Part shown: one piece after another, positions 891 through 63,505 of the stretch | Numbering within the stretch: position 1 is the first letter of the stretch | How the letters are laid out: each line of letters opens with the position of its first letter | NCBI GenBank assembly: GCA_038087875.1 | Contig: CM075982.1 | Location: 26,722,001-26,786,000, forward strand | DNA from: Malacoraja senta | Lineage: Eukaryota | DNA length: 64,000 bases | Reading direction: 5' to 3' | The notes under the pieces: generated by a model | Databases searched by the model: none | Told to the model about the DNA's origin: nothing | The model's input: only the letters and a program-made list of their open reading frames with translations | Translations under genes and position numbers: made by a program

Positions 891-1067
891 GAAGATAGAC
901 ACAAAATGCTGGAGTAACTCAGCAAGACAGGCAGTATTTCTGGAGAGAAGGAATGGGTGACTTTTCGGGTCGAGACCAGTCTTGAGAAGGGTCTCGACCC
1001 GAAACGTCACTGAGTTACTCCAGCATTTTGTGTCTACCTTTGGTTTAAATCAGCATCTGCAGTTCCT
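891..1067. mobile_element. Palindromic Penelope-like/hammerhead element, internally deleted
   Basis: Inverted arms; GGGTCTCGACCC-GAAACGTC core; 14-bp TSD TCCTATATATGTTC at 877-890 and 1068-1081. Confidence 0.8.
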
Positions 1068-2857
1068 TCCTATATATGTTCCATGTCCTACATATTGCTA
1101 GTTTTTTGTGGCCTGTTTCGTAATCACTGATGTGGAACTTTGTCAGGAACTTTGTTAATCCAAGCACATTACAGTAACTTGTTGCTGAATATATTTTTAA
1201 AAAACTGCAGATACTGGAAATCTAAAATAAGAAAATGTAAAATGCTGGTAATACTCAGGGCAGGCTGCATCTGTGGGAAGAAAGTCAACATTTCGGGTCA
1301 GGGATCCTTTGCCAGAACATGTAGCTTATTCCTGTTGTGACACACAAGTAATAATTCAAGAAAGCTTCCAGTCAATAAATGAACGTCATTGGTTTTGCAA
1401 TTGTTAATTTATTTTTCCCTTGAACTGTTGTTGAACTATATTGTTCATAATATGCTTCTCAACTCCCTTTTTTCAAATTATACAAATGTACTCGGATAGG
1501 AATTGTAAAGTGGAGTTGCTGGAGACCTTGTCACTCATCTTGAATACTTGACCCAATATATAACTTGTGACATTTGAATTTGCTTTAACATGGAGGGCAT
1601 TTTATTGAGTTATACCGAAATGACAGAATGTCCTTTCCCAGCATGTTTAATGTTCTTTTCAACCGAGTTACTTTGGCATCTTTGTAAATTTTGGTCATAT
1701 TATAACTTTGACTTTTAAATATTACCAAGGTGGTATATACACATTTCAAACAATGGAAAACTGACTTGTCTTGTTTCATGCAATTCTAACGCCAGTTATG
1801 AAGAATTTTATGTTTGTACGTTATGTACTTATGATATATCCAAACATTTGTATTACTCGTCAGTAGTCTGCCAAACTATCATTGTGATAGAAAGTTGAGT
1901 TCAAGTTCGTAAGCACAGAATTGCAGGCTCTGTTATTGTTATGAGGATGCATCAAATTTCAGTCAAACATTTAAAGTCGTTCACACACTTAGTAAGTTAA
2001 AACAATAATCATGAGATTTTGAAGGAAAGCCAATAAATTTGTTCTAATACCTTGAGTCAACATTTATCCTTCAACCTCTGCTACTAAAAGTAGATTACTG
2101 TGCATACTTGTCTTGTTTTGTAGCTTACAGCAGTGGCTGTATTTTGTAAATACTTCATTAGCTCCAAATTACTCCAGAAAGGTGCAAAATACCTTATTTC
2201 CCCATTATTCCTCCACTGATAACCACAACTGCTTTGTTCCACATCATGTTCGGCCCAGACATTGTGGGCCGGTGGGCCTGTTTCTACGTTGTACCGCACT
2301 GCTCTATAGATGGTCCTTTCAGTGAATCAATTATTACTCTTCTGAACAGTTTCTTGGAGATCTCATCCAAATCTGATGTGGAGCAATTCACTTTTATCTT
2401 CCAAGCTATGTTAAAATATTTTTGTCTCTTGGTAATTTGGTACTTTCCCCCCCACCTCGAGCAGGATTTTGTCAAACATTGAAGGGAACATTAAAATAAC
2501 ACAAAATTATGGAGGAATAAATGTGTTTGGTATTTGGTTACTAAATTAGCTTATGGTTAATTATCTATTGGCTTGGGGTGGTACTTTGCAATTTACAATT
2601 ATGAAGGACTTTGATTATAACATTTCCAAAGCTCTTCATAGTGTCATGAATAGGTTTTGCAAGGGTTCTGAGAAAGTGGCTGGAGAAGAATGGAGATGTG
2701 GGTGGAATTGAAGCTGTGGGGACATTGAAACCCATGAGACTTGGGCAACTAAAGTTTGGTATGGTGCCTGAGTTGCCTGCAATAGTGAAGATCTGGATGG
2801 GCAAGTATAATGGGAAAGTTGAACCTGTACTTGGATGTGAAAAATATACATCTTCTA

Positions 2858-5016: not shown

Positions 5017-6372
5017 ACAATGCACTTACAAACCTGCATATCTTTGGAATGTGAGAGGAAACCGGAACACCCGGAGAAGCCCCACGCATGTCACGGGGCG
5101 AACGTACCGCGTACAGACAGCTCCCGTAGTCAGGATCGAACCCGAGTCTCTGGCGTGGGAGGCAGCAACTCTACTGCTGTACCTCCGTTGAAAAGCATTA
5201 GAAAGCAAAGCTTGTATCCCCTGGAATTTAGAATAAAGGACTTGTTGAAATGTATAAGATTCTGAAGAGTGTTAACAGACTGTCTGTGGAGGGTGTGTTT
5301 TCTCTTGTGGGAGAATGCTGAACTAGGAGGTCACTGATTAAAAATAAGCCATTGCCCATTTCCGAAAAATATGAGGCTTTTTTTCTCTGAAAGTTGTGAA
5401 ACTTTCCAAAATGTGGTGGAATAATGGTTATTGAATATATTTTCAGGTCAGAGGAGAGTGGATTTTTGTTAAGCAGCAAGGTGAAAGGTTACTACATACA
5501 GATTGTTAGGAATACAGAAGTGAAGCTACAATCAGATTTTCATAGTTCCCTCCATATCAGCTCCCAGCAGAACAATCCCATTAGTATCTACTTGCACTTT
5601 TGAGTTATTAACAGTAGCCATTTAACCTGCCAGCACAGGTTTGAGGGAGGAAACCGGAGCATCAGGTTGTTCAGGGAGAAAGTGCAAACTCCACATTGAC
5701 AGCACCCAAATTCAAGATTGAACTACATGAAAGTCCATGTGGCATTTGAGGCTTTGCTCGTTATTTTCCTTCGATTGCTCACCTGCCTTGTTACTTCTGA
5801 TCCGCATCTTCAAGCTTGCAATAATATTTTCCAATCTTATTTTATTCGTAAAATAGTTTAACTGAAAGGAGCTGGAGAATTTTGCATTTTGCAAAACAAT
5901 TCAATCTAAAGTGACAATTTTAGAAAACTAAGACTCTTGTGGATGAAAAATTTAGCTGGCACAAGCATATAAATATTTTGCTGACATTGTAATAGTCTCT
6001 TGCAAAGGTGTGCATTTTTTTTTCTCCCATCAATAAAGCTGTTCTTTCCCTTTGAAAATGAATTCCTTTATACATTGAACCTAGTTTAAAAATGGGCAGG
6101 TATAATTTTAGATCAACTGATTCTCACCAGGCCAATTAGTAGTATTTTGCACATTCGATTGTATTTAGTCCTGTGTTGTCCTATGTAATTTGATAGGAAT
6201 CGCGAGCTTCCTCTGATGGAAACCTAGAACTCGTGCTTTGCTCTAGTCTTGGGGTGAAATACCATAATACTTAAGAAATTGAGTGTGATTGACAGTTAAC
6301 TTTTGCATTCAGAAAATAACTTGCTGGGAAATTATCATCCATCCCTTTCAAGGTTACAGAGTTCATTAAAAG

Positions 6373-6466
6373 TCTGAAGAAGGGTTTCAATCCGAAACGT
6401 TGCCTATTTCCTTTGCTCCATAGATGCTGCCTCACCCGCTGAGTTTCTCCAGCATTTTTGTCTACC
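6373..6466 (+). mobile_element. Single-arm hammerhead element, GTT subfamily
   Basis: CTGAAGA-A-GGGT TTCA ATCC-GAAA-CGTT; 11-bp TSD TTCATTAAAAG at 6362-6372 and 6467-6477. Confidence 0.8.
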
Positions 6467-8633
6467 TTCATTAAAAGCAGGTATTTGTTGCAAACTCTAA
6501 ATTGCTTATTAATTATAATGTCCCTGTAAATGAGTAAATACTTAATCTATGTCTTGTTTCATCCATTCTTCCTTTCTCTTTGCCATACTCTGCATATTTA
6601 AGCATGGAGGAAGCCAATGCTTTCTGCGGGAGGTATATATAATTACAGAACAAGACATAAAAATTGAGCCACTGGCTCAAATCTAACAGTCTGGTTTAGC
6701 TTGGAACATTGCTTAAGATAAACTTCCTCAGCCCATTGACTACTTTTATGACTCCATATTGTATGAGATCAGTGTATTTCAAATTGAACTTTGGAAATAT
6801 CATTTTTCTACATTTGTTCTCCTATATTAGCTTGGACCTCAGTCCCAATGTTGATGAGAGTCCTGCAAGGTTGCTGGCAATCAATTTGTCCAAGGGTAAT
6901 TGTATGACATTGTTCTAATGTCCTTCTTGTTTGACTTTGCAAATATATTTAGTTATCTGGAAAAGTGCAGTTGAGAAATATGACGTCACACATGAAAACC
7001 TTGGATGGGTGAAACAGATGATCCACTGGGATAATTCTTCAGCTTACTTCAGCACAAAGTAGATGGACCATAACGTATTACAATCGGTCTAATCGAGAAA
7101 CACTGGAGGATGAAAATAAAATAAATAATGGATTAGATATTCTTGTTCGTAATTTACAGTTACTTGGCAGCTGATATGAGAGTTTTTGGCAGATATTTGG
7201 GTGCTGGTAGAAATAGCTCAGAGTGTCTAAAGACAAATACAAAAGTACTTTGTTTCCCCATTATGGCACATATTATTGTTTCTCAAAAAATGCAATCTGT
7301 ACATTTGGCACAGTTATCAAGGTTTTTTAATTGTGCTCCCAATTCCTTTTGTCAGTCTGGTAATATCTATAACATTAGAATTGGTAGATCAAATAATTGA
7401 CTCACAAAAGAGGTATTTGGAGAACATGCACAGTAAGGCAGAGAAGTCAAAATATAACTTTGAAAGCGACTAGTAAATTTAACCAAGGAAGCCAATAGTA
7501 GGTCCCGTTCTCCCATAATACCGGAGGCCATTCGGTCTGTCAAGTCTTTGCCAACTTCTCGGCAATTCAGTCAATATTTTTTTTTCCCCACTTATTTCCC
7601 CGTAATCCATTCTTTTCAATTGCCCATCATCTCCACCTTGATTTTCATACCTTCTCTAGGGATAGTTTACAGTCACCCATTAACCTACCAACCCATACAT
7701 CTTGGTGATGTGGACAGAAACTAGAGCATCTGGAGCAAGCCCACATGGTCATAGGGAGTACAGTCTCCACAGTGAGAGCCTTTAAAGCCTGGGTTGAACC
7801 TTGATATAGATGCAAGACACCAACTCTACCTGCTGCACCACTGTGTTGCCTACATAGAGGATGGGTATCGTGGCATGCATGCTTGGAACAGGGTGTGATG
7901 TTAGCAACTACATTTTGAATAGGTTGGATGAAGGAAGATCAACCAGGTGAAGATTGTAATAAATACACATTTTCAACAGCTGGGTACAAGCTATTGAGGT
8001 GCATGTGGAAGATAACATTTTTGAAAATGTAGTGCATTTAATGTTTGACTCCTGTTAATCAATGCATTGGCTTTCTGAATTCAGTGCTAAGGACAAGGAT
8101 GCATTTATGGCAGCTTAGTGAAAACCTTGTAATGTCCTTGAAATTTTAGATTCTCTGCTTCCACGAAGATAGTAGGTAAAGAATTACAGAATATTTAATC
8201 TCCTGCCTTAAATGGATGGCAATGTATGATGTGTTCGGATGGAGTGTAATTGGGATTTGTACATTGATGTTACTTCTTTATTTCTGTGCTTTTTTTTCCC
8301 TCCTTCATTAGTGGTCGAGATTGCTAGAGAGTTTTTAAAGTAATCAGCATTGATGGAATTCATATAAATTGTCTGCACTTCAACCTGGTATGTTGGTGAT
8401 CAAGGAGGGTAGAATAGAACATAGTACAGTACAAGAACAGATCATTTGGCACACAATGTCTGTGCCATATATTATGCGAAGACCAACTCTAAACCGCCTG
8501 CATGTTCCTCTGTTTGGGGAAACAAACTTGCCTTGAACATTTCCTTTAAAGTTTGCCCCTCGCCTTAAAGCTGTGCCCTCTGGTATTTGATTTTTCCATC
8601 CTGGGAGAACGGTCCTGTATTCACCATCTATGT

Positions 8634-11448: not shown

Positions 11449-11748
11449 GGAACAATATATTATGTTTTGATTTCATTTGTTCAGTAATTTTACAAGAAAA
11501 GCATTTTATTTAATTGTTTTTATTTATTCGTTTCTGACAGATTCATTAACTTTGTCTATCTAGGAGTTAAAATTAGGGATGCAGACTTCAAATGAACACA
11601 ATACAATCTGAAGAAGAGTCCCAACCCGAAACATTACCTCCAATTCCTCCACCGATTCTGCCTGACCCACTGAGTTACTTCAACACTTTGTGTTTTGCTC
11701 AAGATTCTTGCATCTGCAGTTCTTTGTGTCTCTAAATAACATAGGTGT

Positions 11749-11971
11749 GTAGGAAAGAACTGCAGATGCTAATTTAAATCGAAGGTAGACACAAAATGCT
11801 GGAGTAATTCAGCGGGACAGGCAGCATCTCTGGAGAGAAGGGATGGGTGACGTTTCGGGTCGAGACCCTTCTTCAGTCTGAAAAAGGGTCTCGACCCAAA
11901 ACGTCACCCATTCCTTCTCTCCAGATATGCTGCCTGTCCCGCTGAGTTACTCCGGCATTTTGTGTCTACCT
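11749..11971. mobile_element. Palindromic Penelope-like/hammerhead element, GTC subfamily
   Basis: Arms meet at CTTCTTCAG-T-CTGAA; 16-bp TSD TAAATAACATAGGTGT at 11733-11748 and 11972-11987. Confidence 0.88.
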
Positions 11972-13297
11972 TAAATAACATAGGTGTTCTGTTTGCTGGC
12001 ATTTGATGTGAATGGATTTAGTTTCAATACTAGGAAGAACTTTGTGCTTTCTGCCATGTGACTGATCATGTGCATGCACACTGGGAATATTTATAGTTGG
12101 TTGCCAGCTGCTGGTTTTTGGTATTTTGCCCACTTCTCCAACTGAGGCTTTGCTGCAGGCCATTAATGCTTGTAAACAGAAAAAAATAATGTGATCCTGC
12201 TTTGTAAGAATTTTAAACATGACAAAGTTTCGTAACAAAATTTAATAGTATTCAATTTTGCACTGGAAGTTTATATTTACAGAAATTAAAATTGAGCACT
12301 TTGTCTTTTAGTTCTTAGTACAAACAAATGGAAACAATATTTTCCTATCCATACCCAAGGCTGAAGACAAATAGAATTTTTGCTGTTGCAAATTTCACGA
12401 ATAGAACAAATGTTGTTCTGGTTAAATGCTTGAGATTCAAACATTCTGGAATTTAACTGTTTTAAGATTGTTAGATCATTTTTTATCCTTTCCAGAAGGA
12501 GGATTCATTGAGAAACAATAACACATTCTCTTTTTTTCATTTGCTGATGCTCAAGATTTGTTTTGTGGAACATCATCAGCCATAATGCAATCCTGAGTTT
12601 CTACTGCTTCTAGCGTCATTTATAACCACATTTATTTACAGACTAATAGAGGCAGTGATGTGCAAAGTGGCAGAGGTGTGAATGGTTCGCATTTAAACAA
12701 ATATTAGACAAAGACATCAATTTAATTTTGCACCTTTTAAAATATTTGCATTTTTTAAGCACGCGTTTAACATATGGCTGTATCTTCTTGCTCACTCTGT
12801 ATGTGAGGAGTTCTGCACTATTTATTTTTACGCCTTAGACAGTTTCTTATAACAGAAGAAGTATGTTGTTAGTTTGTTGTTAGAATTCCAGAGAGCACAA
12901 TGACTGCAAGATTGGTTTCTCATGTTTTGAATTAAGGGAGGCAGTCTGGGACATACTGTTGGCAAAATTAACAGCTATTATCAATTTGCCCATTCAGCAG
13001 CTTGCCTTGCAAAAAAATTGTAATCTAAATGTGCAAGGGCAAGTCCAACTATCACATGCCAGGGCAAATCCTTGCTCAGTATTGTTAGTGGGCCTTAATA
13101 CAAATACTTATTCTTTAGAAGTTTGTGGAGTTGGCTTGGCAGTACTCGGATGTGGTTTAAAATATTTAATCAACTGAAGTAAGCTACTTTCCCGTGGCAT
13201 TTGTTCCTCTGCTGTGTATTCAGGAGTAAGCATTTTCCACCCCTTCAGGGGAAAACTGCTACACATCAATAATTACATTTTTTTTAAATCATTTCAG

Positions 13298-16839: not shown

Positions 16840-18326
16840 ATATGGGTGTTTCCGTAAATAAGTGTACCGACCTGTGACATGAGTGGCCAAATTTGAAAGT
16901 TATTAAATTATAACGAAATACCATATCATTAAAAATGGGCCTACCTATGATCATTTTGCGCTAATTTGTGATCAAAATTTGGGGGGAGGGGGAAGAGAAA
17001 AAAAAATTATTTATGATTTTTTTGTTTTACTATACATAAATGAGAAAGAATACAGTAAATTTTCATCGCATTCAATATTAATTTCCTCGAAATTTGCCTG
17101 GAACCAAAAACATGTGTAGATGTTTCAATACAGTGTGCACACTTTACAACAATATAGCAACAAGCAATGAAAGCTTAACGGAATTTTAACATTTCTATCG
17201 TAAACTAGGAACAACATTTACGAGAAATGAACGAAAAAGTGAAAAAAGATTTTTAATAACCAAGCAAAAAAAAGTGAACTCAAAGTGCCCACAACGTGAC
17301 CACTTAGATACTATCTCTTCTACTGATTTCTAAGCTCCCTTGCAAAATGTCGGCACGCAACCCACTATAAGGCCCGTAGTTCAGGTCAGGGTCATTTTAA
17401 ATCGCGATTAAAAAAAATGTTATCGCGTTGACGAGATCAGAAAACGGGAGGGACAACAGAATTAGTCATCGATAAAATAGGTGAGCAAACTAGATTTTTA
17501 TTTCATGATTTCAAGTTCTATTCATTATTAAGTATTTCCATGGAAAGCTTAAACACAAAATATAAACAATTAAAAAGAAACAATATATATATAAAAACAG
17601 TTACACTGCTTTTAAATCACACATTTCACACGTGACCAAATGTGAGCTACTCACATTTTGCTGCAAAAACTTTAGGCATCAGAAAACCAGCTAAATTATA
17701 AAAATCATAAACAAAATCAGAATTTGGCTTATGGCTAATATAGAGTTATTTAATTGCAAAATTAATGTGATCTTTATAGTATAAATTAGCCTACGGATTT
17801 GATGAAATCCTGCTTGAAAAATGTCGCCAAAAAAGGCTAGAAAACATAGGGACATATCTGATATTTTTCTTTGTAAAAATAGATTTATTTATTTTTTCTT
17901 CATCTCATTATTTTGGATACACACCATGATCTATACTATTTAAAATACAGGATATGAAACAATGGGATTACTACATTAAAAAAACGGAAAATAACCTATG
18001 TTTAAGAAGGAACTGCAGATGCTGGAAAATCGAAGGTAGACAAAAATGGTGGAGAAACTCGGCGGGTGAGGCAGCATCTATGGAGCGAAGGAAATAGGCA
18101 ATGTTTCGGGTCGAAACCCTTCTTCAGAACGTTTCGGGTTGAAACCCTTCTTCAGACAGTCTGAAGAAGGGTTTTGACCCAAAACGTTGCCTATTTCCTT
18201 CGCTCCATAGATGCTGCCTCACCCGCTGAGTTTCTCCACAATTTTTGTCTACCTAGGAAAATAACCTAGAAGTTTGGAGACCTTCAGTTTCACTGCCGAG
18301 TGTTGTATTTACGGAAACACCCATAT
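16840..18326. mobile_element. Non-autonomous TIR DNA transposon (~1.49 kb including a nested insert)
   Basis: Perfect 21-bp IR ATATGGGTGTTTCCGTAAATA (16840-16860 / 18306-18326) that includes a TA or ATAT TSD; splits a CR1 tail. Confidence 0.85.
17999..18255. mobile_element. Palindromic hammerhead element, GTT subfamily, with duplicated core
   Basis: 13-bp TSD GGAAAATAACCTA at 17986-17998 and 18256-18268; nested in the TIR element. Confidence 0.88.
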
Positions 18327-22352: not shown

Positions 22353-22424
22353 ACACTTGCCTCAGGACGCAATGATGCATTTACTTAATGATTTGATCTC
22401 TCTTCTTTCAATAGAAGTACTGGA

Positions 22425-40490: not shown

Positions 40491-41662
40491 TAGTTATGTA
40501 TATCTTGAACCTGCTGTTGCTTTTACTTTTCTACATTTTATTTAACTTGCTAGTTTCAATCAAGAACATCAGACAGGGAGTAGTTAATAGTTGATGCAGA
40601 ATAAATATTGGAATATTGTAATTAAAAAACAGTAATAAAAATGATTTACTGTAATTGTGTTATAATGGTTTTAAATACAATAGTCAAGTAATTGATGATT
40701 TCAATTCTACTTTTATGTGGGAGAAAAGATTTGGATTATTACTTGTTTTATTAATTCATATTTCAAATTTTTTAAAAAACATTTGATGTTTAATATATTG
40801 AGCAATATAGATGTATTTTCAAAATTGCTTTTAACATTGATTCAAGGGATACAGCTTTTTCTCGGCTGGGCCAGCATTGAATATCCCACCCCTAGTTTGC
40901 CTCAAAAAGATACTCCAGCCTTCTTGAATCACTGCAGTCCTGAAGTATGAGTTAAGCCACAATACTGTTAGGGAGGGTATGTCAGAGTTTGACCCAGTGA
41001 CTGTGAAAGAATAGTGAATTTCCAAGTCAGGATAGTATGTGGCTTGGTGGGCAATATCTAACGGGTGGTATTCTCCTGCTTTTGCTGCCCTTGTCCTTGT
41101 AGCTGGTAGAGGTGGGGTTTGGATGGTACTGTCTAAAGAGTCTCGGTGAGTTGCTGCAGTGCATCATGTAGATGGTACAATGCATGTCAATCTGAAGAAA
41201 GATCCCAGTCTGAACCGTCGCCTGTCTAATCTCTTCACAGACGTTGGCTGAACTGAGTTCCTCCAGCACTTTGTGTTTAACTGAAACTGGAAGACTTGTT
41301 GTCTGTCTTGCTCTGTATCATACCACTTAAAGCATATAACCACTGCATCACCTCAGGAGTCCTGTTTTCAAAAGCTTCTTGTTTAACTGTGCTTTAAATA
41401 CATTTTACTGTCTGGCATATTGCCTTCAATTTGTTCAGACTAATACACGCAGCTCAATAACTTGGTGCTTTTCACATAATGTGTAATTTTCTGAGATATG
41501 GTTCAAGTCCACTGTAATTGATTTCTTATTCCTAGACAGGATGTGATCTGGGGGTTGTGAATCTGTATTACTCCTGTGTACTCCTTGAAATTTTGTTTGA
41601 TTGGAGTCTGGGGGAAAACTGTTCGGGATGAATTTGAACTATAAAGATATAGTTGGAGAGAT

Positions 41663-41903
41663 GTGTATAGGAAGGAACTGCAGATGCTGGCGTAAATCTG
41701 AAAATAGACACAAAAAGCTGGAGTAACTCAGCGGGACAGGCAGCATCTCTGGAGAGAAGGAATGGGTAAAGTTTTGGCTCGAGTACCTTCTTCAGACTGA
41801 AGGAGGGTCTGAAGAAGGGTCTCGACCCGAAATGTCACCCATTCCTTCTCTCCAGAGATGCTGCCTGTCCCACTGAGTTACTCCAGTGTTTTGTGTCTAT
41901 CTT
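41663..41903. mobile_element. Palindromic hammerhead element, GTC subfamily
   Basis: 13-bp TSD TAGTTGGAGAGAT at 41650-41662 and 41904-41916. Confidence 0.87.
41805..41840 (+). ncRNA. Minimal type I hammerhead ribozyme motif (predicted)
   Basis: Stem I GGGT/ACCC; CTGAAGA; stem II GGGT-CTCG-ACCC; GAAA; TG; TC cleavage site at 41835-41836. Confidence 0.6.
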
Positions 41904-43681
41904 TAGTTGGAGAGATATACAGCACAGAAACGGGCCTTGCTGACATCCGACACCTGTTTGTTACTTCTACATGAATCCCATAATTTTATACTCTCCACTT
42001 TCCCGTCAACTCCCTCAAGTTTGTACCACTCACCTACATACTAAGTGCAATTTACAACCAACAATTCACCTAGCGATCCATCTCATAGTCATACATATGG
42101 CCTAACTTGCCCACACTAACCGTACGAGTCTGGGATGTGACAACAAACTAAAGCACCTGGAGGGAACCCCATGTGGTCACTGGGAGAATATGCAGACTAC
42201 CCACAAGATTATAGATTGCATAACATTGCCTTTTAGAAAATTATGAAAAAAATATTTATGATTGAATAACATTTAACAATTACTTAAGCGATTCAATTGC
42301 ATTTCTTTGGGTACTAGTGCTATTTAATTTTGTTGACAATTGCTATGTCATAAATGGACATAAGCCAACTTTTTTTTGTTCCTCTGCCCCCCTCCCCTCC
42401 AGTCTCAGTTTATTTTTTTCATCTTTTTCCTGTTCAGTCATTGTATAATGCTTTTCTTCATCCAGCTGCATAAAATAAAAGCAGAAGAATTTAAGTATTT
42501 TGCACCTCCCAAAATACCACCTGCTCTCCCCCATCCACTTCCACCACCCCTCTGCAGACATCACCAGAGGGAGGTTGCCGGCCATTTAGAGGCCTAAAAG
42601 CCTGTTTGATCATTACTTAGCAAGCAGAACGTTCTGTATGGAGCAACCAGTGTTCGGTACAGTTCAGATGCCGCAAACAGAATGTTAAAGACTTCAAAAC
42701 GTTTCTGAGAAATGTTTGAGGTCTGCATAAGTTAGAGCCCAGGGGGTGATCAATGACCCTGAACTAAAAACAGGAAATGCTGAAAATGCTCAGCCGATCA
42801 GGCAGTATCTGTGGAGAGAGAATGTTTTGGGTCGATGACCTTTCATCAGAACTGCACAATGTGGTGACGTTTACAGATTGTTCATAGTGTTTACCAGGAG
42901 TACTAAATTTAATCATCACCATTCGGAAAATACAAGGAATGCTTTGTTTCCATCTGGCCACGGAAGGGTTAACTTTTTTAAAAACAAATCCAGCTTGTGT
43001 TTTCATTAGGCTGAAGTTCTTGGAAATTCAATTCAGAAAGATGACTCCACAAATAGCTTGAAGCAGGAGTGTCGTTTGCAGCCGTCATTAGCTTAAACTG
43101 AATACGGGATACTGAACGTCAGGCGGTCTGAGATACATTTGTCAGCATATGCTGCTGACCTGCTCTTGAACTATTCGTTGTTTTGATTTCCCCCCCCCCC
43201 CCCCCCACCTCCCTCACTTCCGTTGTTATGTTGATTGCCACCTTTTAAATTCTAGAATGCCATCGCTGCTGCTTTGGGACAAAGTGTTCCTAGCTGTGTT
43301 CCCTCAATTTGTTTTCTTAGAACTTCTAGATCTTATGTAATTGATGTGCCCGCATGGGGAAAGAAAGGTGGTGTGAAACACATCATGTGCATAGCTTCGT
43401 TATTCTGTTGACAACAAACTGAAGTAAAGCTTATTTGGTTAACCCAGACAAAGTTGAACGCAGGCTTGTGAAGAGCTTTGTGCAGTAGGCAGTCATATTT
43501 CAAGTGGGAGGTTGTTTACAAGACAGAAACAGTTAGCAGCTTGCCAGCTTTATGTCGAATAACAGCTACTCACTCGCTCCTTTCTATCTGACACCTGATG
43601 TATTAGTTATTTAATGGTTCCGTTTAATCAGTTACAGCCAAAATACCTGCCTCCTGACCGATTGTTGTGTTTTGACTCCAG

Positions 43682-44232: not shown

Positions 44233-44853
44233 TTAAAAGCTTTCATTCCCATTTGCAAGAAAAAGTGTAAAATATACAATAAACTCCCACAGCCTTTTTA
44301 ATAAAGGTTGAAATTGTTACTTGTTAGTGACTTATTTATTCAGGGAAGAAATTATATTTGCTCCATATTCACCTGAATATTTCAGCTAACTACATTCAAT
44401 TACAGAAGGAAATGGATTTTATGTTAATGTGTTTCAGCAGATCAGTGTGATGTTGCTCAGAGTGACAATGCTGGGATAATTGAGTACAGGAGCTTTCAAC
44501 TGTTGCACAGGCTTGTATAATGTGGGATGGGCACATCAAGTAATATGCAGGAAGTTGATCTTGGGAGTTTTTGCTGATGGCAGGAGCCTGCATGTCATTT
44601 GTATTGGCAACCAAGATATGCAACAATGGTGTCCTGTAGAAGCTGGTGGGAAACAGTCTGCAAATGTGGTAACAAAAGAGAATGGGTCAGGCATTGACAA
44701 GGCTCGAAGCTGGCAGGAAATGGACTGAAAACAAACAATGTGGGTAGTGAGAGCGATAGCATGCAGTTAGTCTAGTCTTTGTGTAACACGTACCTATACC
44801 TGTGTGGTCGTCTCTAACTAAGTTTAAAATTACACAGCAGACACTTAAGTCCT

Positions 44854-45075
44854 AGGTACACAAAAATGCTGGAGAAACTCAGCGGGTGCAGCAGCATCTA
44901 TGGAGCGAAGGAAATAGGTAACGTTTCAGGCCGAAACCCTTCTTCAGTCTGAAGAAGGGTTTCGGCCCGAAACGTTACCTATTTCCTTCGCTCCATAGAT
45001 GCTGCTGCACCCGCTGAGTTTCTCCAGCATTTTTGTGTACCTTCGATTTTCCAGCATCTGCAGTTCCTTCTTTAA
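44854..45075. mobile_element. Youngest-looking palindromic hammerhead element
   Basis: 94-bp arms (44854-44947 / 44949-45042), 1 mismatch, 1-nt spacer; 16-bp TSD CAGACACTTAAGTCCT at 44838-44853 and 45076-45091. Confidence 0.92.
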
Positions 45076-47911
45076 CAGACACTTAAGTCCTGTCTGATTT
45101 GAATAATGTTTCCCACGTCACAATTTATCATCTTGGCAACTTATCTCTAAATGAACAAAAAATATTGGCCTTTCTAGGAAGTCCATTTCCCAAAATCTAA
45201 AGCATAAGTTTTACTCTATATTTTGAAACATGAAGTTTCTATCTGAAGTTTACAGCATGTAAGGTGATTGGAGTCGTAGCTAGTTGAGATGAAGATACCC
45301 CACTGAGTTTGGACCTTTATGACTCCACCAGTGACGTTGTTATGCAAGTACTCCATCAGAACCTCAGTTGAGATTGAAAATAAATCATTTACTTTTCCGT
45401 ATGTTAATGTGCATCCTGCAGCTTAAAATGCATTTGTGGTCCAAAGTCTGCACACTAGTAATGTGCTGAAATAAAATGTTGAAATACTCAATATGATGAT
45501 TTGAGGCACTTGTATATAGAGCATAGAACATTACAGTGTAGGAACAGACCCTTTGGCCCACAATATCTGTGCTAAACACGATGCCAAGATAAACTTGTCT
45601 CATCTGCCTGCCCCTGATCCATATCATGTGTCTATTTAAAAGCTTCTTAAACATCATTATCATACCTGCCTCCACCACCCCTCCTGGCAGTGCATGTTCC
45701 AGGCACCCACCACTCTGTTCTAAAAAAAATCCTTGCTCCACACATCTCCTTTAAACTCTGGCCCTCTAAAAAAAGAAAATTATAAGTGTGTATCAGTATA
45801 ATAATGCTTGTAAGAATGGCATCAAACAGTCTGTAAAATCTGCTGGTCCAGTACCACTGAAGTCCAAAGCCTACTGGATTAATGGAGTTTTACTGTCTAC
45901 AGCAAGTCCCCAGAATAGCAATGAGCAGATAAAGCGACTTTGCAATGTTGCTTGTTTGCTCAATAATGGCACATTATATCATTTGGTAAAATGAGTAAAA
46001 AACCTTAGTTTCCTTTATTTGTTTTAAGGCACCCTTGAATAAGTCTCAGTATGTTGTTAAACCGTTTATTTTTTGCTTTGCTTAGTTCAAATTGTAGTAA
46101 GAAATATCAATGGGATATATTGAGCATTTACATTCTATTTCTCTAGTTTTATACAGTTCAACTATTTTCCATACAATGGAGTTTTTTTCCACCTTGGGGG
46201 TACTCCAATTATTTAATTTTCTGGTCCTTTTGATGATGTTGAAGGTGCCACGAGAAGAGGCTTGTTCATGACCAAGTAAAGCAATCTGAATTGCAGTGAC
46301 TTGGGAGTGTGTGACAAGTCAGTGGGTGTGTTGCTGGGGGTGTCCAGAATAAAGATAGAAAATATTTTAAATATATATGTAAAGGAGAAAAACCACGTCA
46401 ACATGGACTTCCCTATACGAAAATTTAGTACATGTTTCTAAGTTTACAAAATAGATTTTGCGTCAAATCTATTAAACCCAGCAACTGTAAATCGTAAAGG
46501 GCGGCAGCATTGATAGAGACAGAACTTGTGTGTTGTGCCACCTGGAGGTAGGATCTGAGGTCAGCTTTTACCGCAAACCCACGTTAAAAAAACAGTTGCC
46601 AATCTGCAAAAGAATGAAATATACATAGGACAAATCATCTGTTAGCTAGAAATTTAGCGAGAAGATAATTGCACAAAATTCAGGAAAACTTTTCTAACGG
46701 CAGGGGAATATATATATATATATGACGCAAGTGGTAGAGTAAGGGGCCGTCGATGTCGAGAAGGAGATTGACTTGCCAGCAGATGCTACTTCAGTCATTA
46801 GAAATGCACCAAGTGAAAACTTGTCTACATGGGTTATTAAGCTGATGTTCTCCTTGTCCACAAGAATGTTCAATTCGTTTTCTTTGCTAATTGCTTCTGT
46901 GTTGTAATGTCAGTGGAATCTGGTGCTTCCAAGTCATGGTAGAAAACTGCCAAACAAACCCTCCCGTCTTCCCCACCCCGCACTCGCCTGTATCCACCTA
47001 TCACCAGGTTTTATCCCACCCCTCTGCCGACGTTCTCCACCGACTACAATCAGTCTGAAGAAGGGTCCCGACCCAAAATGTCACCTATCCACATTCTCCA
47101 AAGATGCTGCCTGACCAGCTGAGTTACTCCAGCACCTTGTACTTTTTAAAAAATAATTTAAAACCAGATTCTACTCCTGTATTGCCATTGCTTTGGTAAA
47201 CTAGACTTCTATAAGACCACATTAAGATGTATTAAAGAGCTCAAAAAGCCAAGAATGTTGTGAGATAACTTGCCATTTCAAGCACGTGAAACTCTAGAAA
47301 TAATTGCCCCCTTTTCAAAAAAAGGCTGGATTAATGGAGAGTACCGAGGAAAGTTTCACGATGTAGATAGGAGCCATCCAAGGCTTTGATGCTTGGAATT
47401 TGATGCTCTGATGATTTGCCTGTTCATGCACCATCCTAGTGCTGGTTAACTTAATGGATCATCTGTCTGGTAAAGGTTCACTTTTAAAGTTCATCTCCAG
47501 TTTCAGCTCCAGAACCCACAGGAAACCCATGTGTGCACAGGGAGAACGTGCAAACTCCACATGGACATTACCGTAGGTCAGGATCAAGCCAGGGTCTCTG
47601 GCACTGTGAGGCAGCAACTAACTCTATCGGGAGGGAGGGTAGAGTTCTCTCCACACCTCTTTATTCCTCTCCCCAACCTCTTTATCCCAGCTACTCTTTC
47701 TGACTAGATGAAGGGTCCCAACCAGACCTTCACCTATTCCTCCTTGGCTTTTCTTTTTTTTTTGCTTCAGATTTCATCATTTGCAGTCTCTTGTGTGTCT
47801 GGCCCCTGATGGTTTTCATTCATCATCAGTGGTGATCCATTCTGTGTCAGCCCCCTCCCTAAACCCGTGCATTCCTTTTTTAAGATATTATTTTTTGCCC
47901 TCATGAAACGC

Positions 47912-49918: not shown

Positions 49919-50126
49919 AAGATGCAAGGAACTGCAGATGTCAGTTTCCCCCAAAAAACAAAGTGCTGGTGTAACTTGGTGTGTCAGGCAGCATCACTGG
50001 AAAACATGGATAGGTGACATTTGAAGTTAGGACAGTCTGAGGAAGGGCCCCAACCCAAAGTGTCACCCATCCACATTTTCCAGGAATACTGCCTGACCCA
50101 CTGAGATACTTTGTACCTTTGTGTCT
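49919..50126. mobile_element. Older palindromic hammerhead element
   Basis: Degenerate inverted arms; imperfect 14-bp TSD ATTAATGArCyTTG at 49905-49918 and 50127-50140. Confidence 0.7.
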
Positions 50127-51663
50127 ATTAATGAACTTTGCTACTCTCTTTGCAAAGTATTATGGTGCATAAAATCAACTAACTGTCCAGGCCGAGAGGA
50201 CATTGGATCTGGTGTCTTTTTCTAGTAGGGCTGTTCACTGAAGCCACGACCATGGAGAGAGTTTCAATATATTTGACTATTCCATGGGTCATTGTTAATG
50301 CTGGAGAGGTCGTTAGTTGGCAAATTACAGAGATTTGACAAAGAGGGAGGTCACTGATTCCATCTTCTGTTGATATCTGCTGACGTGCTGTAGCAAGGAC
50401 ATGAGTGAGGTAGCAGCATGAGGGTTGCATGGAAAGATTGGATATTAACCTTATTGCTCAATGTGAGTGGGATTTGAAGCTGCAAAATTGGGAGTTGGGC
50501 CAATATTGGTACTGTTGCACTGTGACGGGGTGGAAATTGGAGGAGGAGAAATATGACATTATTAGTCACGCCAAATATCTCTACGCGGCAATTTGTGGCT
50601 TATGTTCAAATGAATATTTGATTTCTGTTTGAGCAAAAATTGCAGACCATAAAATATTATTGCCATTCATTTGCAAACAATCAAGGAAAGACACTAAAGT
50701 GCCTCCTTTGCCCACCATCTTCCCTCTGGCATTCCCAGGGGGTCAAAAATGGCAGACCATGGAAGAGGCACATTCTGAAAATGAATTATTGTTTACAATA
50801 AGCTAGGACCCCTTATTCTTATGAATGTATAATGATGTATGGATTGGTGATTTATAGGGAAAAAAAATTAAACTAGGGTGCGAGGAATACGTCAATTAAT
50901 AATTTAATATAATTAATGCTTTCTTTTTAATTTCCTTTTTTTAGAATCTGACATTATTACAACATTTTTGGCATTAACTTGGGAGAAGGGAAAAGTAAGC
51001 CTTGAAAGGGAAATTTAAACGGGACAAGAGGACAAGTTCTGTGCAGATGTTCACAGGCTGACTATAAATCTGCACAGTGGTTAGGGTAAAGTCTGATATA
51101 ATTACATCAGCAAACTCATTGATGTACAAATGGCAACATTTGATTAAATGGGTAGGACACGACAATACAAAACGTGTAGGAAGGGGCTGAAGATGGTGGT
51201 TTAAACCGAAGATAGACACAAAAAGCTGGTAACTCCGGGTCAGACAAAGATATTAACTGACCCGCTGAGTTACTCCAGCTTTTTTTGGGGTCACTACACA
51301 ACAATACAAAGCCAATTAATGCAGGTAGGAAGAGTGTAGGAAAATTTAGGATTATTGTAAGAAACAGATTACCTACCACTTCATGTTTACGTCTTCAAAT
51401 CTCCTCCTGTAAATTTAGTAATACAGGATGGGAACCAGCCCTTCGGCTCCACTCATCCATGCCAACCAAGATGCTTTCCTGAGCTTGTTCCATTTGGTTG
51501 CATTTAGCGCATATCCCTCTAAACCTTTTTTATCCTTAAACCTGTCTAAATGTCTTTAAAATGTTGCACCTGTAGCCATCTCCCCCACTTCCTCTTGTAG
51601 TTCTTTTCATATATACGTAATGATTACAGCAATGTGCATCTGTGCAGAATGTTAATGGAGTAA

Positions 51664-56443: not shown

Positions 56444-57520
56444 GTAAAGATAATTGCTCCTCACTTTGCTGTGATAACATCTCTTCAATTCTGGCCTTGT
56501 GGCAATGATGTCCATTTGGCTTTTGGTACCCTGTCTCTGCTCCATAAAAATATTTTATAAATACCTTCCTGCCCTTTTGTTTAAGGCTGTTGATATTTCT
56601 ATTTTTAGTCTTACTCGACCAACAGAGCAGTCAGGTGATCTTCTCCGTATTCACTGTGGAGCTGCTGCTTCAAACCTTTGATTTATTTTACAAAGGCCGT
56701 CATTAAAGGATTGTTCATTGCATGGATGTTTTGGTGTGGAGGCTTTCCAACTGATGGTCAGTGTGCTGTCAAGGTGCCTTTTCACCCAGCTGTGGCACAG
56801 CTCCCCATTGTGCATTAAATCAGCTGATTTTAAACTGGCTTGTAAATACGGAGTTTTACAGTTAACACAGACCTTCATATTGTTATACGTGCATGCAGAA
56901 ATGGCTCAATGAGAAAGTATCGGAGGGCTGCAGCTTTCCTGCACTATAAGTTCATGTAAACTACTGCAGGAGAGGGGAGCACTGAAACAAGCTTTAAAAA
57001 GCAAAGAAAAAAAATGTGTGGCAGCCTGTGAAGAAATGGTTGAGTTTAGTTTATTGTCACGTGTAACGAGGTACAGTGAAAATCTTTTGTTGCATGCTAA
57101 CCTGTCAGCAAAAATACATTACATGATTACAATCGAGCCATCCACAATGTACAGATACATGATAAAGGGAATAATGTTTAGTGCAAGAGAAATGGAATGG
57201 ATAGTTTAAGTTTTGTTGCATGTAACTGAATGATTTCTAGCATTGCAACTTTACCTTCCACTTCTGATCCTTCCTGTTATCCAGGAGAATGGGCTGTCTA
57301 AAGTCATAACTGGAGACAAAAAAGACTGCAAATGCTGCGACCTTGAGCAAAGACAAACATTGCTGAAGTAACTCAGAAGGTCAGGCAGCACCAATCTGAA
57401 GCGGGGTTCCACCCAAAACATTTCCCTCCACAGTTGTTGCCTGGCCAGTTGAGTTCCTCCAGCAGTTTGTTTTATGTTTAGCTGAAATTCCTTTACTGAG
57501 TGCGCAACTGCAGCTTGATA

Positions 57521-57737
57521 AGAAGAAGCCTCAAAATGCTGGAGTATCTCAGGCAGCATCTCTGGAGAACATAGATAGGTAAAGTTTCGGGTTGAGACCC
57601 TTCTTCAAATTCAGAGTCTGAAGAAGGTTCCCGACCCGAATCATCGCCTATCCATGTTCGCCAGCGATGTTGCCTGACCGTTGAGTTAATCCTGCACTTT
57701 GTGTCTTTTATAAAGCAGCATCTGCAGTTCCTTGTTT
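57521..57737. mobile_element. Palindromic hammerhead element (CACCTATCCATG-type subfamily)
   Basis: Inverted arms; 13-bp TSD CTGCAGCTTrATA at 57508-57520 and 57738-57750. Confidence 0.78.
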
Positions 57738-58000
57738 CTGCAGCTTAATAGGTTTTGTGTTCTACCCACTCAGTTGGCCAAATCGCATCAGAAACTCATG
57801 GGAATAATTTTGAGATGTGTTTGTTGCAACAGAATGCTATAACCCAATTAGTTCATGCATGTTTGTTTGGTGCAGAGTGGAAATAGTGCACAAAGTGTCA
57901 GCAGATTCTGTTTTGTATGTCCTCTGATGATACCTTTTGCAGTTTGCACATTTTGCACTATTTCTTCCTGTTTGCATGATTTATTTTTCTTTCTGCCCAG

Positions 58001-62063: not shown

Positions 62064-63234
62064 ATATTTTGTTCTGATCTATTTAATCCCTTTAACTGAT
62101 ATAAGTGCGGTTACAACTGGACGTAAAGCTTGTCTAGTAAATGATGATGGTTACAATACTGCTGGAAATCGAACAATTAAATGCTTGAGAGACATGGATG
62201 AACAGAAACAACGGCTGTTCCCAGGTCTCCTGGTGAGCTTGCTGTTGAGCATGCTCCACTCTTGGTGGGCGGTGGCACTACGCATACATTTAGAACATCA
62301 GCTGATGCTGCTGCATCCCCAGAGTGTAAAGAACAGCTGAAGCGTAAACAAACTATCTTTGGCTATTTAAAAGGCTCCGATCTTCCTGAAAATAGTCACC
62401 AATCCCTTCATCACTTCTTGATGGCCTTTGGCCACAACTCGTGGTCAATGGAAACACATCAAAATAAAATCATCCTTTTGAGTTTTGTTTAAAAAAAAAC
62501 CTGAGTTACTGAAAAATTTCATTTTTGTTCCGATCTTGGCAATGTTTTAACATTTTCAAGTGCACACCACTTGCACATGTTAGTTTCATGTCTCTGAGCC
62601 AGCTGCCTTGTACAAAACATGTTGTGCCTTTTATTTCCAAATCATACCACCCCTATTCTGCTGCCAAGGTCTCGGCCTTTTGTGCATCACACTTTATTGC
62701 AACCCTCTAGCTCGCCATTTAAAATCTTTACTCTTTGCAGCCCGAGAACAGTTCCCATCTTTGGTCCCTTCAGTCCATGTTGTTAACTTCACTCATGGCT
62801 CTTTAAAAAAAAAAAATTGTTTAATCTACTTTAATGTTTAATGTATCAGAAACCAAACCCTTTATAAGTCAAAGCTGAATATATGACCATCTGCTGAGAG
62901 GCAGTATTTTGAGAGTTTCTTATTTTTAACTCCAGGGAAACCTCATCCCATCCCAAGGCTTCATCTTGAAGGTACGACTGAAGTTATCATTCTTAACTGC
63001 ATCAGAAAAAAAGAATATCTAGTTTCTCACAATCATTATGGTGTACCTTCAATTTTTTTTTTTAACAAACCGCCAAGGCATTAGCGTGTGAATTGTTTGA
63101 TTTCCTAAGAATAATATTCAACCTACGATTATCATCAATATAATTTACATTCAGAGCCTAAGGCTTTTATAATGATTTGTGAAACTGAAGTTGACGCAGT
63201 ACTGTTGAAATTATTGTGTTTTGTCTGACAAAAA

Positions 63235-63420
63235 GGGACATTAAGTGCTGGATTAACTCAGTGGGTCAGGCAGCATCTCTGGAAAACATGGATAGGTGAT
63301 GTTTCGGTTCAAGACCCTTCTTCAGACGGAAAAATATCCATCTTCTCCAGTGATGCCTAACCTGATGAGTTACTCAGGGGGTATTAAGAGAGATGCATAT
63401 TAACTAGCATCTGCAGTTCT
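63235..63420. mobile_element. Degenerate palindromic hammerhead element ~85 bp upstream of the last exon
   Basis: AACTCAGTGGGTCAGGCAGCATCTCTGG...GACCCTTCTTCAGAC and a partial inverted arm. Confidence 0.7.
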
Positions 63421-63505
63421 TTGTTTTCACATTATTTTCAGTCTGGGATTGTTTTAAATATAGTCAGATATAAAAATAACTTTTTCTTCTGTCTGTTGAT
63501 TGCAG

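What the first reader, a model, noticed from the sequence alone, without database searches (positions are those of the whole stretch)
44838..45091. Mobile ~220-bp palindrome carrying back-to-back hammerhead ribozymes on both strands
Seen: two 94-bp arms with one mismatch meet at CTTCTTCAG-T-CTGAAGAAG, flanked by a 16-bp TSD. Each strand reads out of the centre as CTGAAGA-A-stem II-GAAA-CGTT (plus strand GGGT TTCG GCCC). That is the hammerhead core (CUGAnGA, stem II, GAAA, NUH), with stem III reduced to the palindrome ACGT. Roughly 25-30 related copies occur in the window. Across the better-preserved copies the stem II pairs are kept while the loop varies (CTCG, TTCG, CCTG, CCCG, TTCA). Established: minimal type I hammerheads are hallmarks of Penelope-like retroelements and cleave as dimers. 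Inference: this is a non-autonomous, TPRT-mobilised Penelope-dependent SINE-like family whose unit is a two-ribozyme fold-back. In either transcription direction the antisense arm is made first and could sequester the ribozyme in a long hairpin, a built-in safety catch that might explain tolerance in introns. Caveat: stem I is only 2 bp in this copy.
Basis: partly seen in the sequence, partly recalled or inferred. Interest (0 to 1): 0.85.

Follow-up and report, generated by a model that had tools for sequence, protein, structure and literature searches.

The report
Palindromic mini-Penelope insertion with hammerhead cores
A 222-bp palindrome in a cartilaginous-fish intron is one recent jump of a very abundant short retroelement that carries the hallmarks of Penelope-like elements, including a minimal hammerhead-ribozyme core; the palindrome was most likely made at the moment of insertion and is not an inherited two-ribozyme device.

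Summary
At 44854-45075 two 94-nt arms with one mismatch meet at a single T. The right arm carries an extra 33-nt tail, and a perfect 16-bp target-site duplication flanks the whole element. Contigs from two related species run straight from 44837 to 45076, so the whole palindrome went in as one event. The window holds 47 related arms at about 34 loci (6.7% of the sequence). Thirteen pairs are head-to-head and none are tandem. Each arm has a minimal hammerhead core of the type described for Penelope-like elements (PLEs). Six intact motifs occur, all inside the family, against none in 200 simulated windows. Between subfamilies only loop II and the cleavage-site base vary. Rfam finds no hammerhead, stem I is 2 bp and covariation is weak. 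The tail on one arm only, the adjoining inverted copy and the variable duplications (8-16 bp) match published PLE insertion signatures. Apex junctions differ between copies of one subfamily, arms can be unequal, and single-arm copies exist. So the fold-back is made anew at each insertion, probably from two cDNAs primed on both nicked strands. No autonomous PLE could be linked. The scan has noted this family many times elsewhere in this genome. Verdict: a new member of a known kind.

The parts
44838..44853 (.). Left copy of the 16-bp target-site duplication CAGACACTTAAGTCCT
   Evidence: Sister-species contigs hold only one copy of it and join 44837 directly to 45076.
44854..44947 (-). Tail-less arm, family positions 2-95 read on the minus strand. 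It ends at the inner 3' terminus (...GTGTACCT).
   Evidence: It has one mismatch to the other arm.
44920..44947 (-). Minimal hammerhead core on the minus strand (CUGAAGA-A-GGGU UUCG GCCU-GAAA-CGU-U). The predicted cleavage is between 44920 and 44919.
   Evidence: Descriptor hit. Not detected by Rfam.
44948..44948 (.). Single central base (T) of the palindrome. It is family position 1, hammerhead position 2.1.
44949..44976 (+). Minimal hammerhead core on the plus strand (CUGAAGA-A-GGGU UUCG GCCC-GAAA-CGU-U). The predicted cleavage is between 44976 and 44977.
   Evidence: Descriptor hit. The core positions do not vary between subfamily consensuses.
44948..45042 (+). Tailed arm, family positions 1-95.
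45043..45075 (+). 33-nt 3' tail, present on this arm only (TTCGATTTTCCAGCATCTGCAGTTCCTTCTTTAA-like).
   Evidence: Genome-wide, family contigs end either at 45043/44 or at 45077 and then run into AT-rich unrelated flanks. The PLE 'tail' is described in PMC8557442 and PMC11167929.
45076..45091 (.). Right copy of the 16-bp target-site duplication.
11737..11992 (-). Fold-back copy B: tailed arm 11751-11876 (minus), tail-less arm 11877-11976 (plus), and a perfect 16-bp duplication TAAATAACATAGGTGT. It was inserted directly after the tail of an older single arm (11607-11728).
17990..18270 (-). Fold-back copy C with a 13-bp duplication TAGGTTATTTTCC. Its apex holds an extra 29-nt piece (18128-18156) that runs from family position 1 to the predicted hammerhead cleavage site.
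41656..41921 (-). Fold-back copy D with a 13-bp duplication ATCTCTCCAACTA and a 12-nt filler at the apex.
878..1084 (+). Fold-back copy A with duplication ATATATGTTC. The arms are unequal and the tailed arm has an internal deletion.
6362..6478 (+). Single-arm, tail-less copy (6373-6467) flanked by the 11-bp duplication TTCATTAAAAG. It starts exactly at TCTGAAGA.
49924..50134 (.). Fold-back copy H. The tailed arm starts at family position 18 and the tail-less arm at position 1, with an 8-nt filler. The duplication is ATTAATGA.
63230..63425 (.). Fold-back copy K. The tail-less arm covers positions 1-97 and the tailed arm starts at position 33, with an 8-nt filler.
57506..57750 (+). Fold-back copy F with a 13-bp duplication CTGCAGCTT(G/A)ATA, inserted into the tail of the older pair J (57322-57513).

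Best explanation
The element is a young insertion of a short, very abundant retroposon: an arm of about 95 nt with an optional tail of about 33 nt. This unit corresponds to the 3'-terminal module of a Penelope-like element, that is, the hammerhead core followed by the region holding two alternative reverse-transcription start sites.

Inferred mechanism. A PLE reverse transcriptase/GIY-YIG endonuclease supplied in trans makes a staggered break, which gives the 8-16-bp duplication. Both exposed 3' ends then prime cDNA synthesis on copies of the same short RNA. One cDNA starts at the outer site and so carries the tail. The other starts at the inner site and has no tail. Both run towards the RNA 5' end, which lies one base before CUGAAGA, and the two cDNA ends are joined there, sometimes with filler or truncation. 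This yields a head-to-head palindrome in one step.

Ribozyme status. The hammerhead core is inherited from the source lineage, where it is under constraint. In this short form it lacks the 5' strand of stem I, and in a fold-back transcript it is locked in a 94-bp hairpin. It is therefore most likely not an active ribozyme here.

Shown: mobility, the architecture, the motif and formation of the fold-back anew at each insertion. Inferred: the PLE enzyme, priming on both strands, and ribozyme inactivity.
For: - Single-step insertion: sister-species contigs join 44837 directly to 45076, with adjacent record coordinates 506|507 and 641|642 (repeated).
- Family size: 47 arms at about 34 loci.
- Orientation: 13 head-to-head pairs with a gap of 12 nt or less, and no tandems.
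- Tail asymmetry: exactly one arm is tailed in 10 of 11 pairs. About 40% of single arms are tailed, so chance gives P=0.004.
- Two 3' termini about 33 nt apart, each followed by AT-rich flanks, are seen genome-wide.
- Duplications vary from 8 to 16 bp and average 70% A+T.
- Two younger copies sit at the tails of older copies.
- Published PLE signatures match: an adjoining inverted 5'-truncated copy and a 30-40-bp tail often at one end only (PMC8557442); a purified PLE protein that nicks and extends both strands and starts reverse transcription at two internal sites that delimit the tail, about 110-120 nt downstream of the hammerhead (PMC11167929); a minimal hammerhead with an extra base between positions 9 and 10.1, a G10.1-C11.1 pair and a palindromic helix III (PMC4209133).
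- Fold-back formed anew at each insertion: apex junctions differ within a subfamily (B is perfect, D has +12 nt, A lacks 9 nt; E is perfect, C has +29 nt). In the unequal pairs A, G, H, I and K the tail-less arm is always the more complete. Single-arm copies with their own duplications exist. Variants private to E are present in both arms.
- Hammerhead motif: 6 hits against 0 in simulations. None of 24 constrained positions vary between subfamily consensuses, against 23 of 72 other positions (Fisher P=6e-4).
Against: - No PLE ORF (RT plus GIY-YIG) lies in the window, and none could be searched for in this genome. The link to a PLE enzyme therefore rests on signatures alone.
- Rfam models do not recognise the motif. 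Stem II covariation is weak. Stem I is 2 bp.
- In vitro, the published PLE showed no difference in start-site choice between the two strands (PMC11167929). The strict pattern of one tailed and one tail-less arm is therefore not explained by simple independent priming.
- What defines the sharp 5' end one base before CUGAAGA is unknown. It is not the predicted cleavage site.
- Pair J appears to carry a tail on both arms.
Confidence: 0.68

Rival explanations
1. The fold-back itself is the heritable unit. A master palindrome would be transcribed as a hairpin RNA and copied as a whole by target-primed reverse transcription. Single arms would be truncated copies.
For: - The fixed architecture, with the tail-less arm on the left and the tailed arm on the right, recurs in 10 of 11 pairs.
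- Most apexes lie at the same base.
- The whole palindrome of E entered in one event.
Against: - Apex junctions differ between copies of the same subfamily.
- The unequal pairs H, K, G, A and I cannot come from a symmetric master by 5' truncation.
- About 15-20 subfamily-diagnostic differences are all mirrored in both arms, which would need paired changes in a master.
- Single arms with their own duplications start exactly at the apex base, and a reverse transcriptase has no reason to stop there on a hairpin RNA.
Confidence: 0.1
2. Copy-back from one template. A single cDNA primed at the outer site reaches the RNA 5' end. The polymerase then turns round on the nascent cDNA and copies it back as far as the inner site. 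This gives a palindrome with one tail.
For: - It explains in one step why exactly one arm has the tail.
- It explains why E and B are perfect palindromes with a single central base.
- The long-form sequence around the apex is a natural small palindrome, TCAG-T-CTGA.
Against: - In the unequal pairs the tail-less arm holds 5' sequence that the tailed arm lacks (H positions 1-17, K 1-32, G 1-13), so it cannot have been copied from that arm.
- Fillers of 8-12 nt occur at several apexes.
- The published enzyme nicks and extends both strands (PMC11167929).
Confidence: 0.15
3. A miniature inverted-repeat DNA transposon (cut-and-paste), or a LINE-dependent SINE, in which the hammerhead-like string is a coincidence.
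For: - It has terminal inverted symmetry, a small size and flanking duplications.
- Rfam finds no hammerhead.
Against: - Duplication length varies from 8 to 16 bp.
- The element is asymmetric, with a tail on one side.
- Single arms insert on their own.
- There is no tRNA, 5S or 7SL head: Rfam gives no hit anywhere in the window. There is no poly(A) or microsatellite tail.
- The complete motif is not expected by chance (0 in 200 simulations), and its constrained positions are invariant between subfamilies.
Confidence: 0.04

Closest known systems
Penelope-like element insertions with an adjoining inverted 5'-truncated copy and a 30-40-bp tail at one end (Craig et al. 2021, PMC8557442; Evgen'ev and Arkhipova 2005, as cited there)
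   Same: Head-to-head inverted copies, a tail on one side only, variable target-site duplications, insertion next to older copies, and a hammerhead in the terminal region.
   Different: Both copies here are cut down to the last 95-128 nt. There is no ORF and no pseudo-LTR tandem. The 5' boundary is sharp, one base before the hammerhead core. The copy number is very high (6.7% of this window).
Minimal hammerhead ribozymes of PLEs (Cervera and de la Pena 2014, PMC4209133; Lunse et al. 2017, known to me only through the review PMC6765202)
   Same: CUGANGA and GAAA boxes, an extra base between positions 9 and 10.1, a G10.1-C11.1 pair, helix III reduced to a 4-nt palindrome (ACGU) that implies action as a dimer, and GUC/GUU at the cleavage site. 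That paper also noted pairs of motifs on opposite strands 100-700 bp apart.
   Different: Helix II is only 4 bp, against 6-8 bp in many PLE motifs. Helix I is 2 bp or absent in the short form. The two motifs are only about 1 nt apart, at the apex of a perfect palindrome.
PAc (Anolis Poseidon) in vitro system (Frangieh et al. 2024, PMC11167929)
   Same: The hammerhead is followed about 100-120 nt later by two reverse-transcription start sites that delimit the tail. Both DNA strands are nicked and extended. Targets are AT-rich.
   Different: That is a full-length autonomous element studied in vitro. It showed no strand bias in start-site choice, whereas the genomic fold-backs here pair one tailed arm with one tail-less arm.
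Animal non-LTR retrozymes (Cervera and de la Pena 2020, PMC7229834; Li, Clavereau and Pollet 2026 preprint, 10.64898/2026.07.22.740005)
   Same: Short non-autonomous hammerhead-bearing repeats proposed to derive from PLE terminal regions.
   Different: Retrozymes are head-to-tail tandem arrays with canonical type I hammerheads, and they give circular RNAs. This window has no tandems; the copies are dispersed single arms or head-to-head pairs.
Twin priming of human L1 (Ostertag and Kazazian 2001; from my own knowledge)
   Same: The second target strand also primes cDNA synthesis, giving an inverted 5' segment within one insertion flanked by a duplication.
   Different: In L1 the two segments come from different parts of one RNA, so no palindrome forms. 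Here both arms copy the same region from defined start sites.

Membership tests
Penelope-like element derivative (non-autonomous or 5'-truncated) | Optional 30-40-bp tail at the 3' end, typically on one side of the insertion only | tested here: met
   The 33-nt tail at 45043-45075 is on one arm only. The same holds in 10 of 11 pairs. Two 3' termini are seen genome-wide.
Penelope-like element derivative (non-autonomous or 5'-truncated) | Inverted 5'-truncated copy adjoining the 5' end | tested here: met
   There are 13 head-to-head pairs, no tandems and no true tail-to-tail pairs.
Penelope-like element derivative (non-autonomous or 5'-truncated) | Target-site duplications of variable length, at AT-rich targets | tested here: met
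   Ten duplications of 8-16 bp average 70% A+T. Family flanks are AT-rich. The empty site is shown in two sister species.
Penelope-like element derivative (non-autonomous or 5'-truncated) | Tendency to insert into or beside pre-existing copies | tested here: met
   B lies directly after the tail of the arm at 11607-11728. F lies in the tail of pair J. This is only two cases.
Penelope-like element derivative (non-autonomous or 5'-truncated) | An autonomous partner that encodes RT plus a GIY-YIG endonuclease and shares this 3' module | not testable with these tools
   The window has no ORF of 161 aa or more. No eukaryotic genome collection can be searched. Metagenome and viral scans for the module found nothing.
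Hammerhead ribozyme (type I, PLE minimal variant) | Conserved core boxes CUGANGA and GAAA, and an NUH cleavage triplet | tested here: met
   CUGAAGA, GAAA and GUU (GUC in the older subfamilies). There are 6 intact motifs against 0 in simulations. The core is invariant between subfamily consensuses.
Hammerhead ribozyme (type I, PLE minimal variant) | Helix II closed by G10.1-C11.1 and supported by covariation | tested here: inconclusive
   The helix is present: 4 bp, with 89% of cells paired. Shuffled columns give 87%, and only 3 cells change on both sides. This is conservation, not covariation.
Hammerhead ribozyme (type I, PLE minimal variant) | Extra base between positions 9 and 10.1, and a palindromic 15.1-16.1 segment that allows a dimer | tested here: met
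   There is an A after CUGAAGA, and ACGU follows GAA. These features are listed in PMC4209133.
Hammerhead ribozyme (type I, PLE minimal variant) | Helix I of about 4-6 bp flanking the core and the cleavage site | tested here: not met
   Only U2.1-A1.1 and G2.2-C1.2 can pair in this copy. Short-form copies lack the 5' strand altogether.
Hammerhead ribozyme (type I, PLE minimal variant) | Recognition by the curated covariance models (Rfam Hammerhead families) | tested here: not met
   No hit at gathering score in the window, and none at E up to 10 on 44800-45120.
Hammerhead ribozyme (type I, PLE minimal variant) | Self-cleavage | not testable with these tools
   There are only indirect hints. 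One is the 29-nt apex piece in copy C, which ends at the predicted site. The other is the recurrent fold-back joint 44918|44978, one base past that site.
Animal non-LTR retrozyme | Head-to-tail tandem repeats of the hammerhead unit | tested here: not met
   No same-strand adjacent arms occur, apart from a 29-nt partial piece in copy C.
MITE / cut-and-paste DNA transposon | Symmetric terminal inverted repeats with a duplication of fixed length | tested here: not met
   The element has an asymmetric tail, its duplications vary from 8 to 16 bp, and single arms are mobile.
LINE-dependent SINE | A polymerase III head (tRNA, 5S or 7SL) and a LINE-type or A-rich 3' tail | tested here: not met
   No Rfam family matches anywhere in the window. 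The 3' end is the 33-nt tail, with no A-run or microsatellite.

The most novel reading that the evidence does not exclude
The conserved hammerhead core in these short elements may be kept to pair two template RNAs, not to cleave them. The pairing would run through the ACGU helix III palindrome, inside a dimeric reverse transcriptase/endonuclease. The two broken target strands would then each copy one template, giving head-to-head palindromes. On this reading the fold-backs are natural footprints of two-template, two-strand target-primed reverse transcription. Rare fold-backs that start at the cleavage site, and the 29-nt apex piece in copy C, would record occasional real cleavage in vivo.
Probability: 0.12. 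Interest if true: 0.8.

Novelty: new member of a known kind. Interest (0 to 1): 0.5.

Why it matters
How Penelope-like elements integrate is the least understood case among the retrotransposon classes. The tail, the inverted copies and the role of the hammerhead are all still described as enigmatic.

This family offers many tiny, datable insertions in which both ends, both reverse-transcription start sites and the junction of the two copies can be read directly. It gives in vivo support to the in vitro finding that both target strands are nicked and extended.

It also adds a constraint that the in vitro work did not show: one tailed arm is paired with one tail-less arm, and the tail-less arm is the more complete.

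For genome annotation, a repeat that makes up about 7% of this window and forms perfect hairpins about 95 bp long inside introns is a likely source of assembly breaks, spurious microRNA calls (as the Rfam E-value hits here show) and double-stranded RNA.

Tried and rejected
- Rfam at gathering score over the whole window and at E up to 10 on the locus gave no hammerhead. The microRNA-model hits (mir-577, mir-722 and others) lie far below their gathering scores and only reflect the perfect hairpin, so I rejected them as microRNA genes.
- Stem II covariation is too weak to use. Most variation is decay after insertion.
- Scans of metagenome and viral contig collections for the hammerhead module found nothing, so no full-length parent was obtained.
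- A full-text search for four characteristic strings of the family found only unrelated primers. Searches for a description of this family in cartilaginous fishes found none. Lunse et al. 2017 is not held in the library.
- The upstream regions of the older long-form copies (40246, 47054) are C/T-rich but do not align significantly with each other. The long form could therefore not be delimited.
- A polymerase III internal promoter as the cause of the sharp 5' end: the stem II region only loosely resembles a B box, there is no room for an A box, and a T-run precedes the 3' ends. Rejected as unsupported.
- A type III hammerhead built across the fold-back, with the long arm pairing serving as helix III: the segment between the would-be cleavage site and the core does not form a helix I next to the core. 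Rejected.
- The second sample of the source species (X20) has too little depth at the junctions to show whether the insertion is polymorphic.
- The runs guessed to be RNA are contigs only, so they cannot show transcript ends or cleavage.
Full report
**Observation**

- Two arms of about 94 nt (44854-44947 and 44949-45042) are complementary except for one CpG-to-TpG difference. They meet at a single T (44948) within CTTCTTCAG-T-CTGAAGAAG.
- The perfect 16-bp repeat CAGACACTTAAGTCCT flanks the element.
The element is asymmetric, because the right arm continues for 33 nt (45043-45075) before the duplication.

**Proof of mobility**

I laid public contigs on the locus.
- In each of two related species (coded E and F), a contig of about 1.1 kb aligns to 44303-44837 and then directly to 45076 onwards. 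The record coordinates are adjacent (506|507 and 641|642).
- These contigs lack exactly one duplication copy plus the whole palindrome and tail.
- Second runs of the same two samples repeat this.
- The flanks differ by about 3.5-4.5% between species, whereas the two arms differ at 1 of 94 positions.
- The complete fold-back therefore entered this lineage recently and in a single event.

**The family**

- A profile built from the arms finds 47 arms at about 34 loci, covering 6.7% of the window.
- Summed contig depth over the element is about five orders of magnitude above the flanks in all three species. This is not a copy number, but it shows a very abundant family.
- Adjacent arms are head-to-head in 13 cases with a gap of 12 nt or less, and are never in tandem. 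The only tail-to-tail neighbours are younger copies that sit at the tail of an older one: B after 11607-11728 and F inside pair J.
- Duplications of 8-16 bp flank fold-backs A, B, C, D, E, F, H and I. They also flank single arms such as 6373-6467, which starts exactly at TCTGAAGA.

**Architecture**

- Arms end either near family position 96 (…GTCTACCT) or near position 128, after a tail that contains CAGCATCTGCAGTTCC.
- Genome-wide, family contigs leave the reference at just these two places and run into AT-rich unrelated sequence.
- In 10 of 11 pairs exactly one arm has the tail. About 40% of single arms are tailed, so independent choice would give this with P=0.004.
- These features match published signatures of Penelope-like elements. 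An inverted 5'-truncated copy often adjoins the 5' end, and a 30-40-bp tail is often present at one end only (PMC8557442).
- The tail corresponds to the stretch between two internal reverse-transcription start sites. These lie a little over 100 nt downstream of the hammerhead in a purified PLE that nicks and extends both strands at AT-rich sites (PMC11167929).

**The hammerhead**

- Each arm reads CUGAAGA, an extra A, a 4-bp helix II closed by G10.1-C11.1 with a tetraloop, GAAA, and then CGU followed by C or U.
- A15.1-C-G-U16.1 therefore forms the palindrome ACGU. Cleavage would follow GUC or GUU.
- These are the traits listed for PLE minimal hammerheads, including the extra base after A9 and a helix III that can form only in a dimer (PMC4209133).
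- A descriptor with these rules finds six intact motifs, all in this family, and none in 200 simulated windows.
- Between three subfamily consensuses, none of the 24 core and helix positions vary, against 23 of 72 other positions (Fisher P=6e-4). The only changes inside the motif are in loop II and at the cleavage-site base, C or U, both of which are allowed. This points to constraint in the source lineages.
- Against full membership: Rfam models do not detect it. Covariation in helix II is weak. Helix I is 2 bp in this copy, and the short form lacks its 5' strand altogether.

**Is the fold-back the unit?**

The evidence says no.
- Copies of one subfamily have different apexes. B is perfect with a central A, D has 12 extra nt and A lacks 9 nt. 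E is perfect with a central T, while C has 29 extra nt.
- In pairs A, G, H, I and K the arms are unequal. The tail-less arm is always the more complete. In H, for example, it starts at position 1 while the tailed arm starts at position 18, and in K at 1 against 33.
- A symmetric master cannot give these by truncation. Copy-back from the tailed cDNA cannot create sequence that this cDNA lacks.
- Variants private to E, and all subfamily-diagnostic differences, are mirrored in both arms. This follows automatically if both arms are copied from one kind of RNA at insertion.
- The best model is therefore two cDNAs, one primed on each strand of the staggered break, joined at or near the RNA 5' end.

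**Consequences for the ribozyme idea**

- The full transcript of either strand folds into a 94-bp hairpin of -184 kcal/mol (z=-27). Single arms have no significant structure.
I read it as a by-product of integration, and the short form probably could not cleave in any case.
- Two hints suggest that cleavage does occur somewhere in the life cycle.
  - The extra apex piece in copy C runs from position 1 to the predicted cleavage site, within 1 nt. This is what a template jump onto a cleaved 5' fragment would give.
  - The most recurrent alternative fold-back joint among near-identical family contigs is 44918|44978. There both arms start one base past the cleavage site. It is seen in 1, 2 and 6 contigs in three species.
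  - Both are suggestive only.

**Unexplained**

- More than half of the arms start at position 1, one base before CUGAAGA, and not at the cleavage site.
- Older long-form copies continue upstream through a C/T-rich stretch that ends in AATCAG. This looks like a 3' splice acceptor, and in Drosophila virilis Penelope an intron ends at the 5' edge of helix I (PMC4209133).
- I could not establish whether the sharp end reflects a transcript start, RNA processing or a stop to reverse transcription.
- The strict pairing of one tailed with one tail-less arm is also not predicted by the in vitro work.

**Comparison and novelty**

- This is a PLE-type insertion reduced to its terminal module. It is not a retrozyme (no tandems) or a MITE (variable duplications, asymmetric tail). 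It is not a LINE-dependent SINE either (no polymerase III head, no A-rich tail).
- I found no description of this family in the searchable literature. Its kind is nevertheless known: dispersed minimal hammerheads, some paired on opposite strands, were reported in 2014, and inverted PLE copies are textbook.
- Other readers of this scan have flagged the same family many times elsewhere in this genome.
- I rate it a new member of a known kind. It has real value as a natural record of PLE integration.

Noticed in passing
window 18128-18156 (minus strand): The apex of fold-back C holds an extra 29-nt piece that runs from family position 1 (TCTGAAGA…) to GAAACGTT, the predicted hammerhead cleavage site (within 1 nt). 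The full arm restarts at CTGAAGA directly after it. This looks like a template jump onto a ribozyme-cleaved 5' fragment.
   Followed up: partly
window 44918|44978 (joint seen in contigs of three species): Among near-identical family contigs, the most recurrent alternative fold-back has both arms starting at position 31, one base past the predicted cleavage site. It occurs in 1, 2 and 6 contigs.
   Followed up: partly
window 44950-44958 with 45066-45074: The 5' end of the arm (UGAAGAAGG, part of the hammerhead core) is complementary to the end of the tail (CCUUCUUUA). The predicted fold of a single tailed arm closes with this 9-bp panhandle. The older subfamilies keep 5-7 bp of it.
   Followed up: no
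window 44960-44974; also 18100-18115 and 6384-6399: In the youngest subfamily, the loop II change from CUCG to UUCG creates an alternative hairpin, GUUUCG/CGAAAC. It competes with helix II and would sequester the GAAA box.
   Followed up: no
window 40247-40400 (minus strand) and 46900-47053: Older copies continue upstream of position 1 through a C/T-rich stretch of 150 nt or more that ends in AATCAG. This resembles a polypyrimidine tract plus a 3' splice acceptor. The two upstream regions do not align significantly with each other.
   Followed up: partly
window 4480-4605, with about 12 further copies (for example 22288-22372, 25006-25122, 48134-48230): A different abundant interspersed repeat (…GGCCCTTCTGCCCACCAAGTCTGCG…) lies just upstream of the arm at 4609. 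It is probably a SINE.
   Followed up: no
window 45520-45700: Another high-copy repeat: summed contig depth is about four orders of magnitude above the flanks in all three species.
   Followed up: no
window 44905-44992: With relaxed thresholds, Rfam microRNA models (mir-577, mir-722, MIR1507 and others) match the palindrome at E about 1e-9 to 1e-10, far below their gathering scores. Fold-backs of this family will produce spurious microRNA-precursor calls.
   Followed up: yes
window 57322-57513: Pair J seems to carry a tail on both arms. It is the only exception to the rule of one tail per pair. Its own duplication could not be found because fold-back F is inserted in its right tail.
   Followed up: partly
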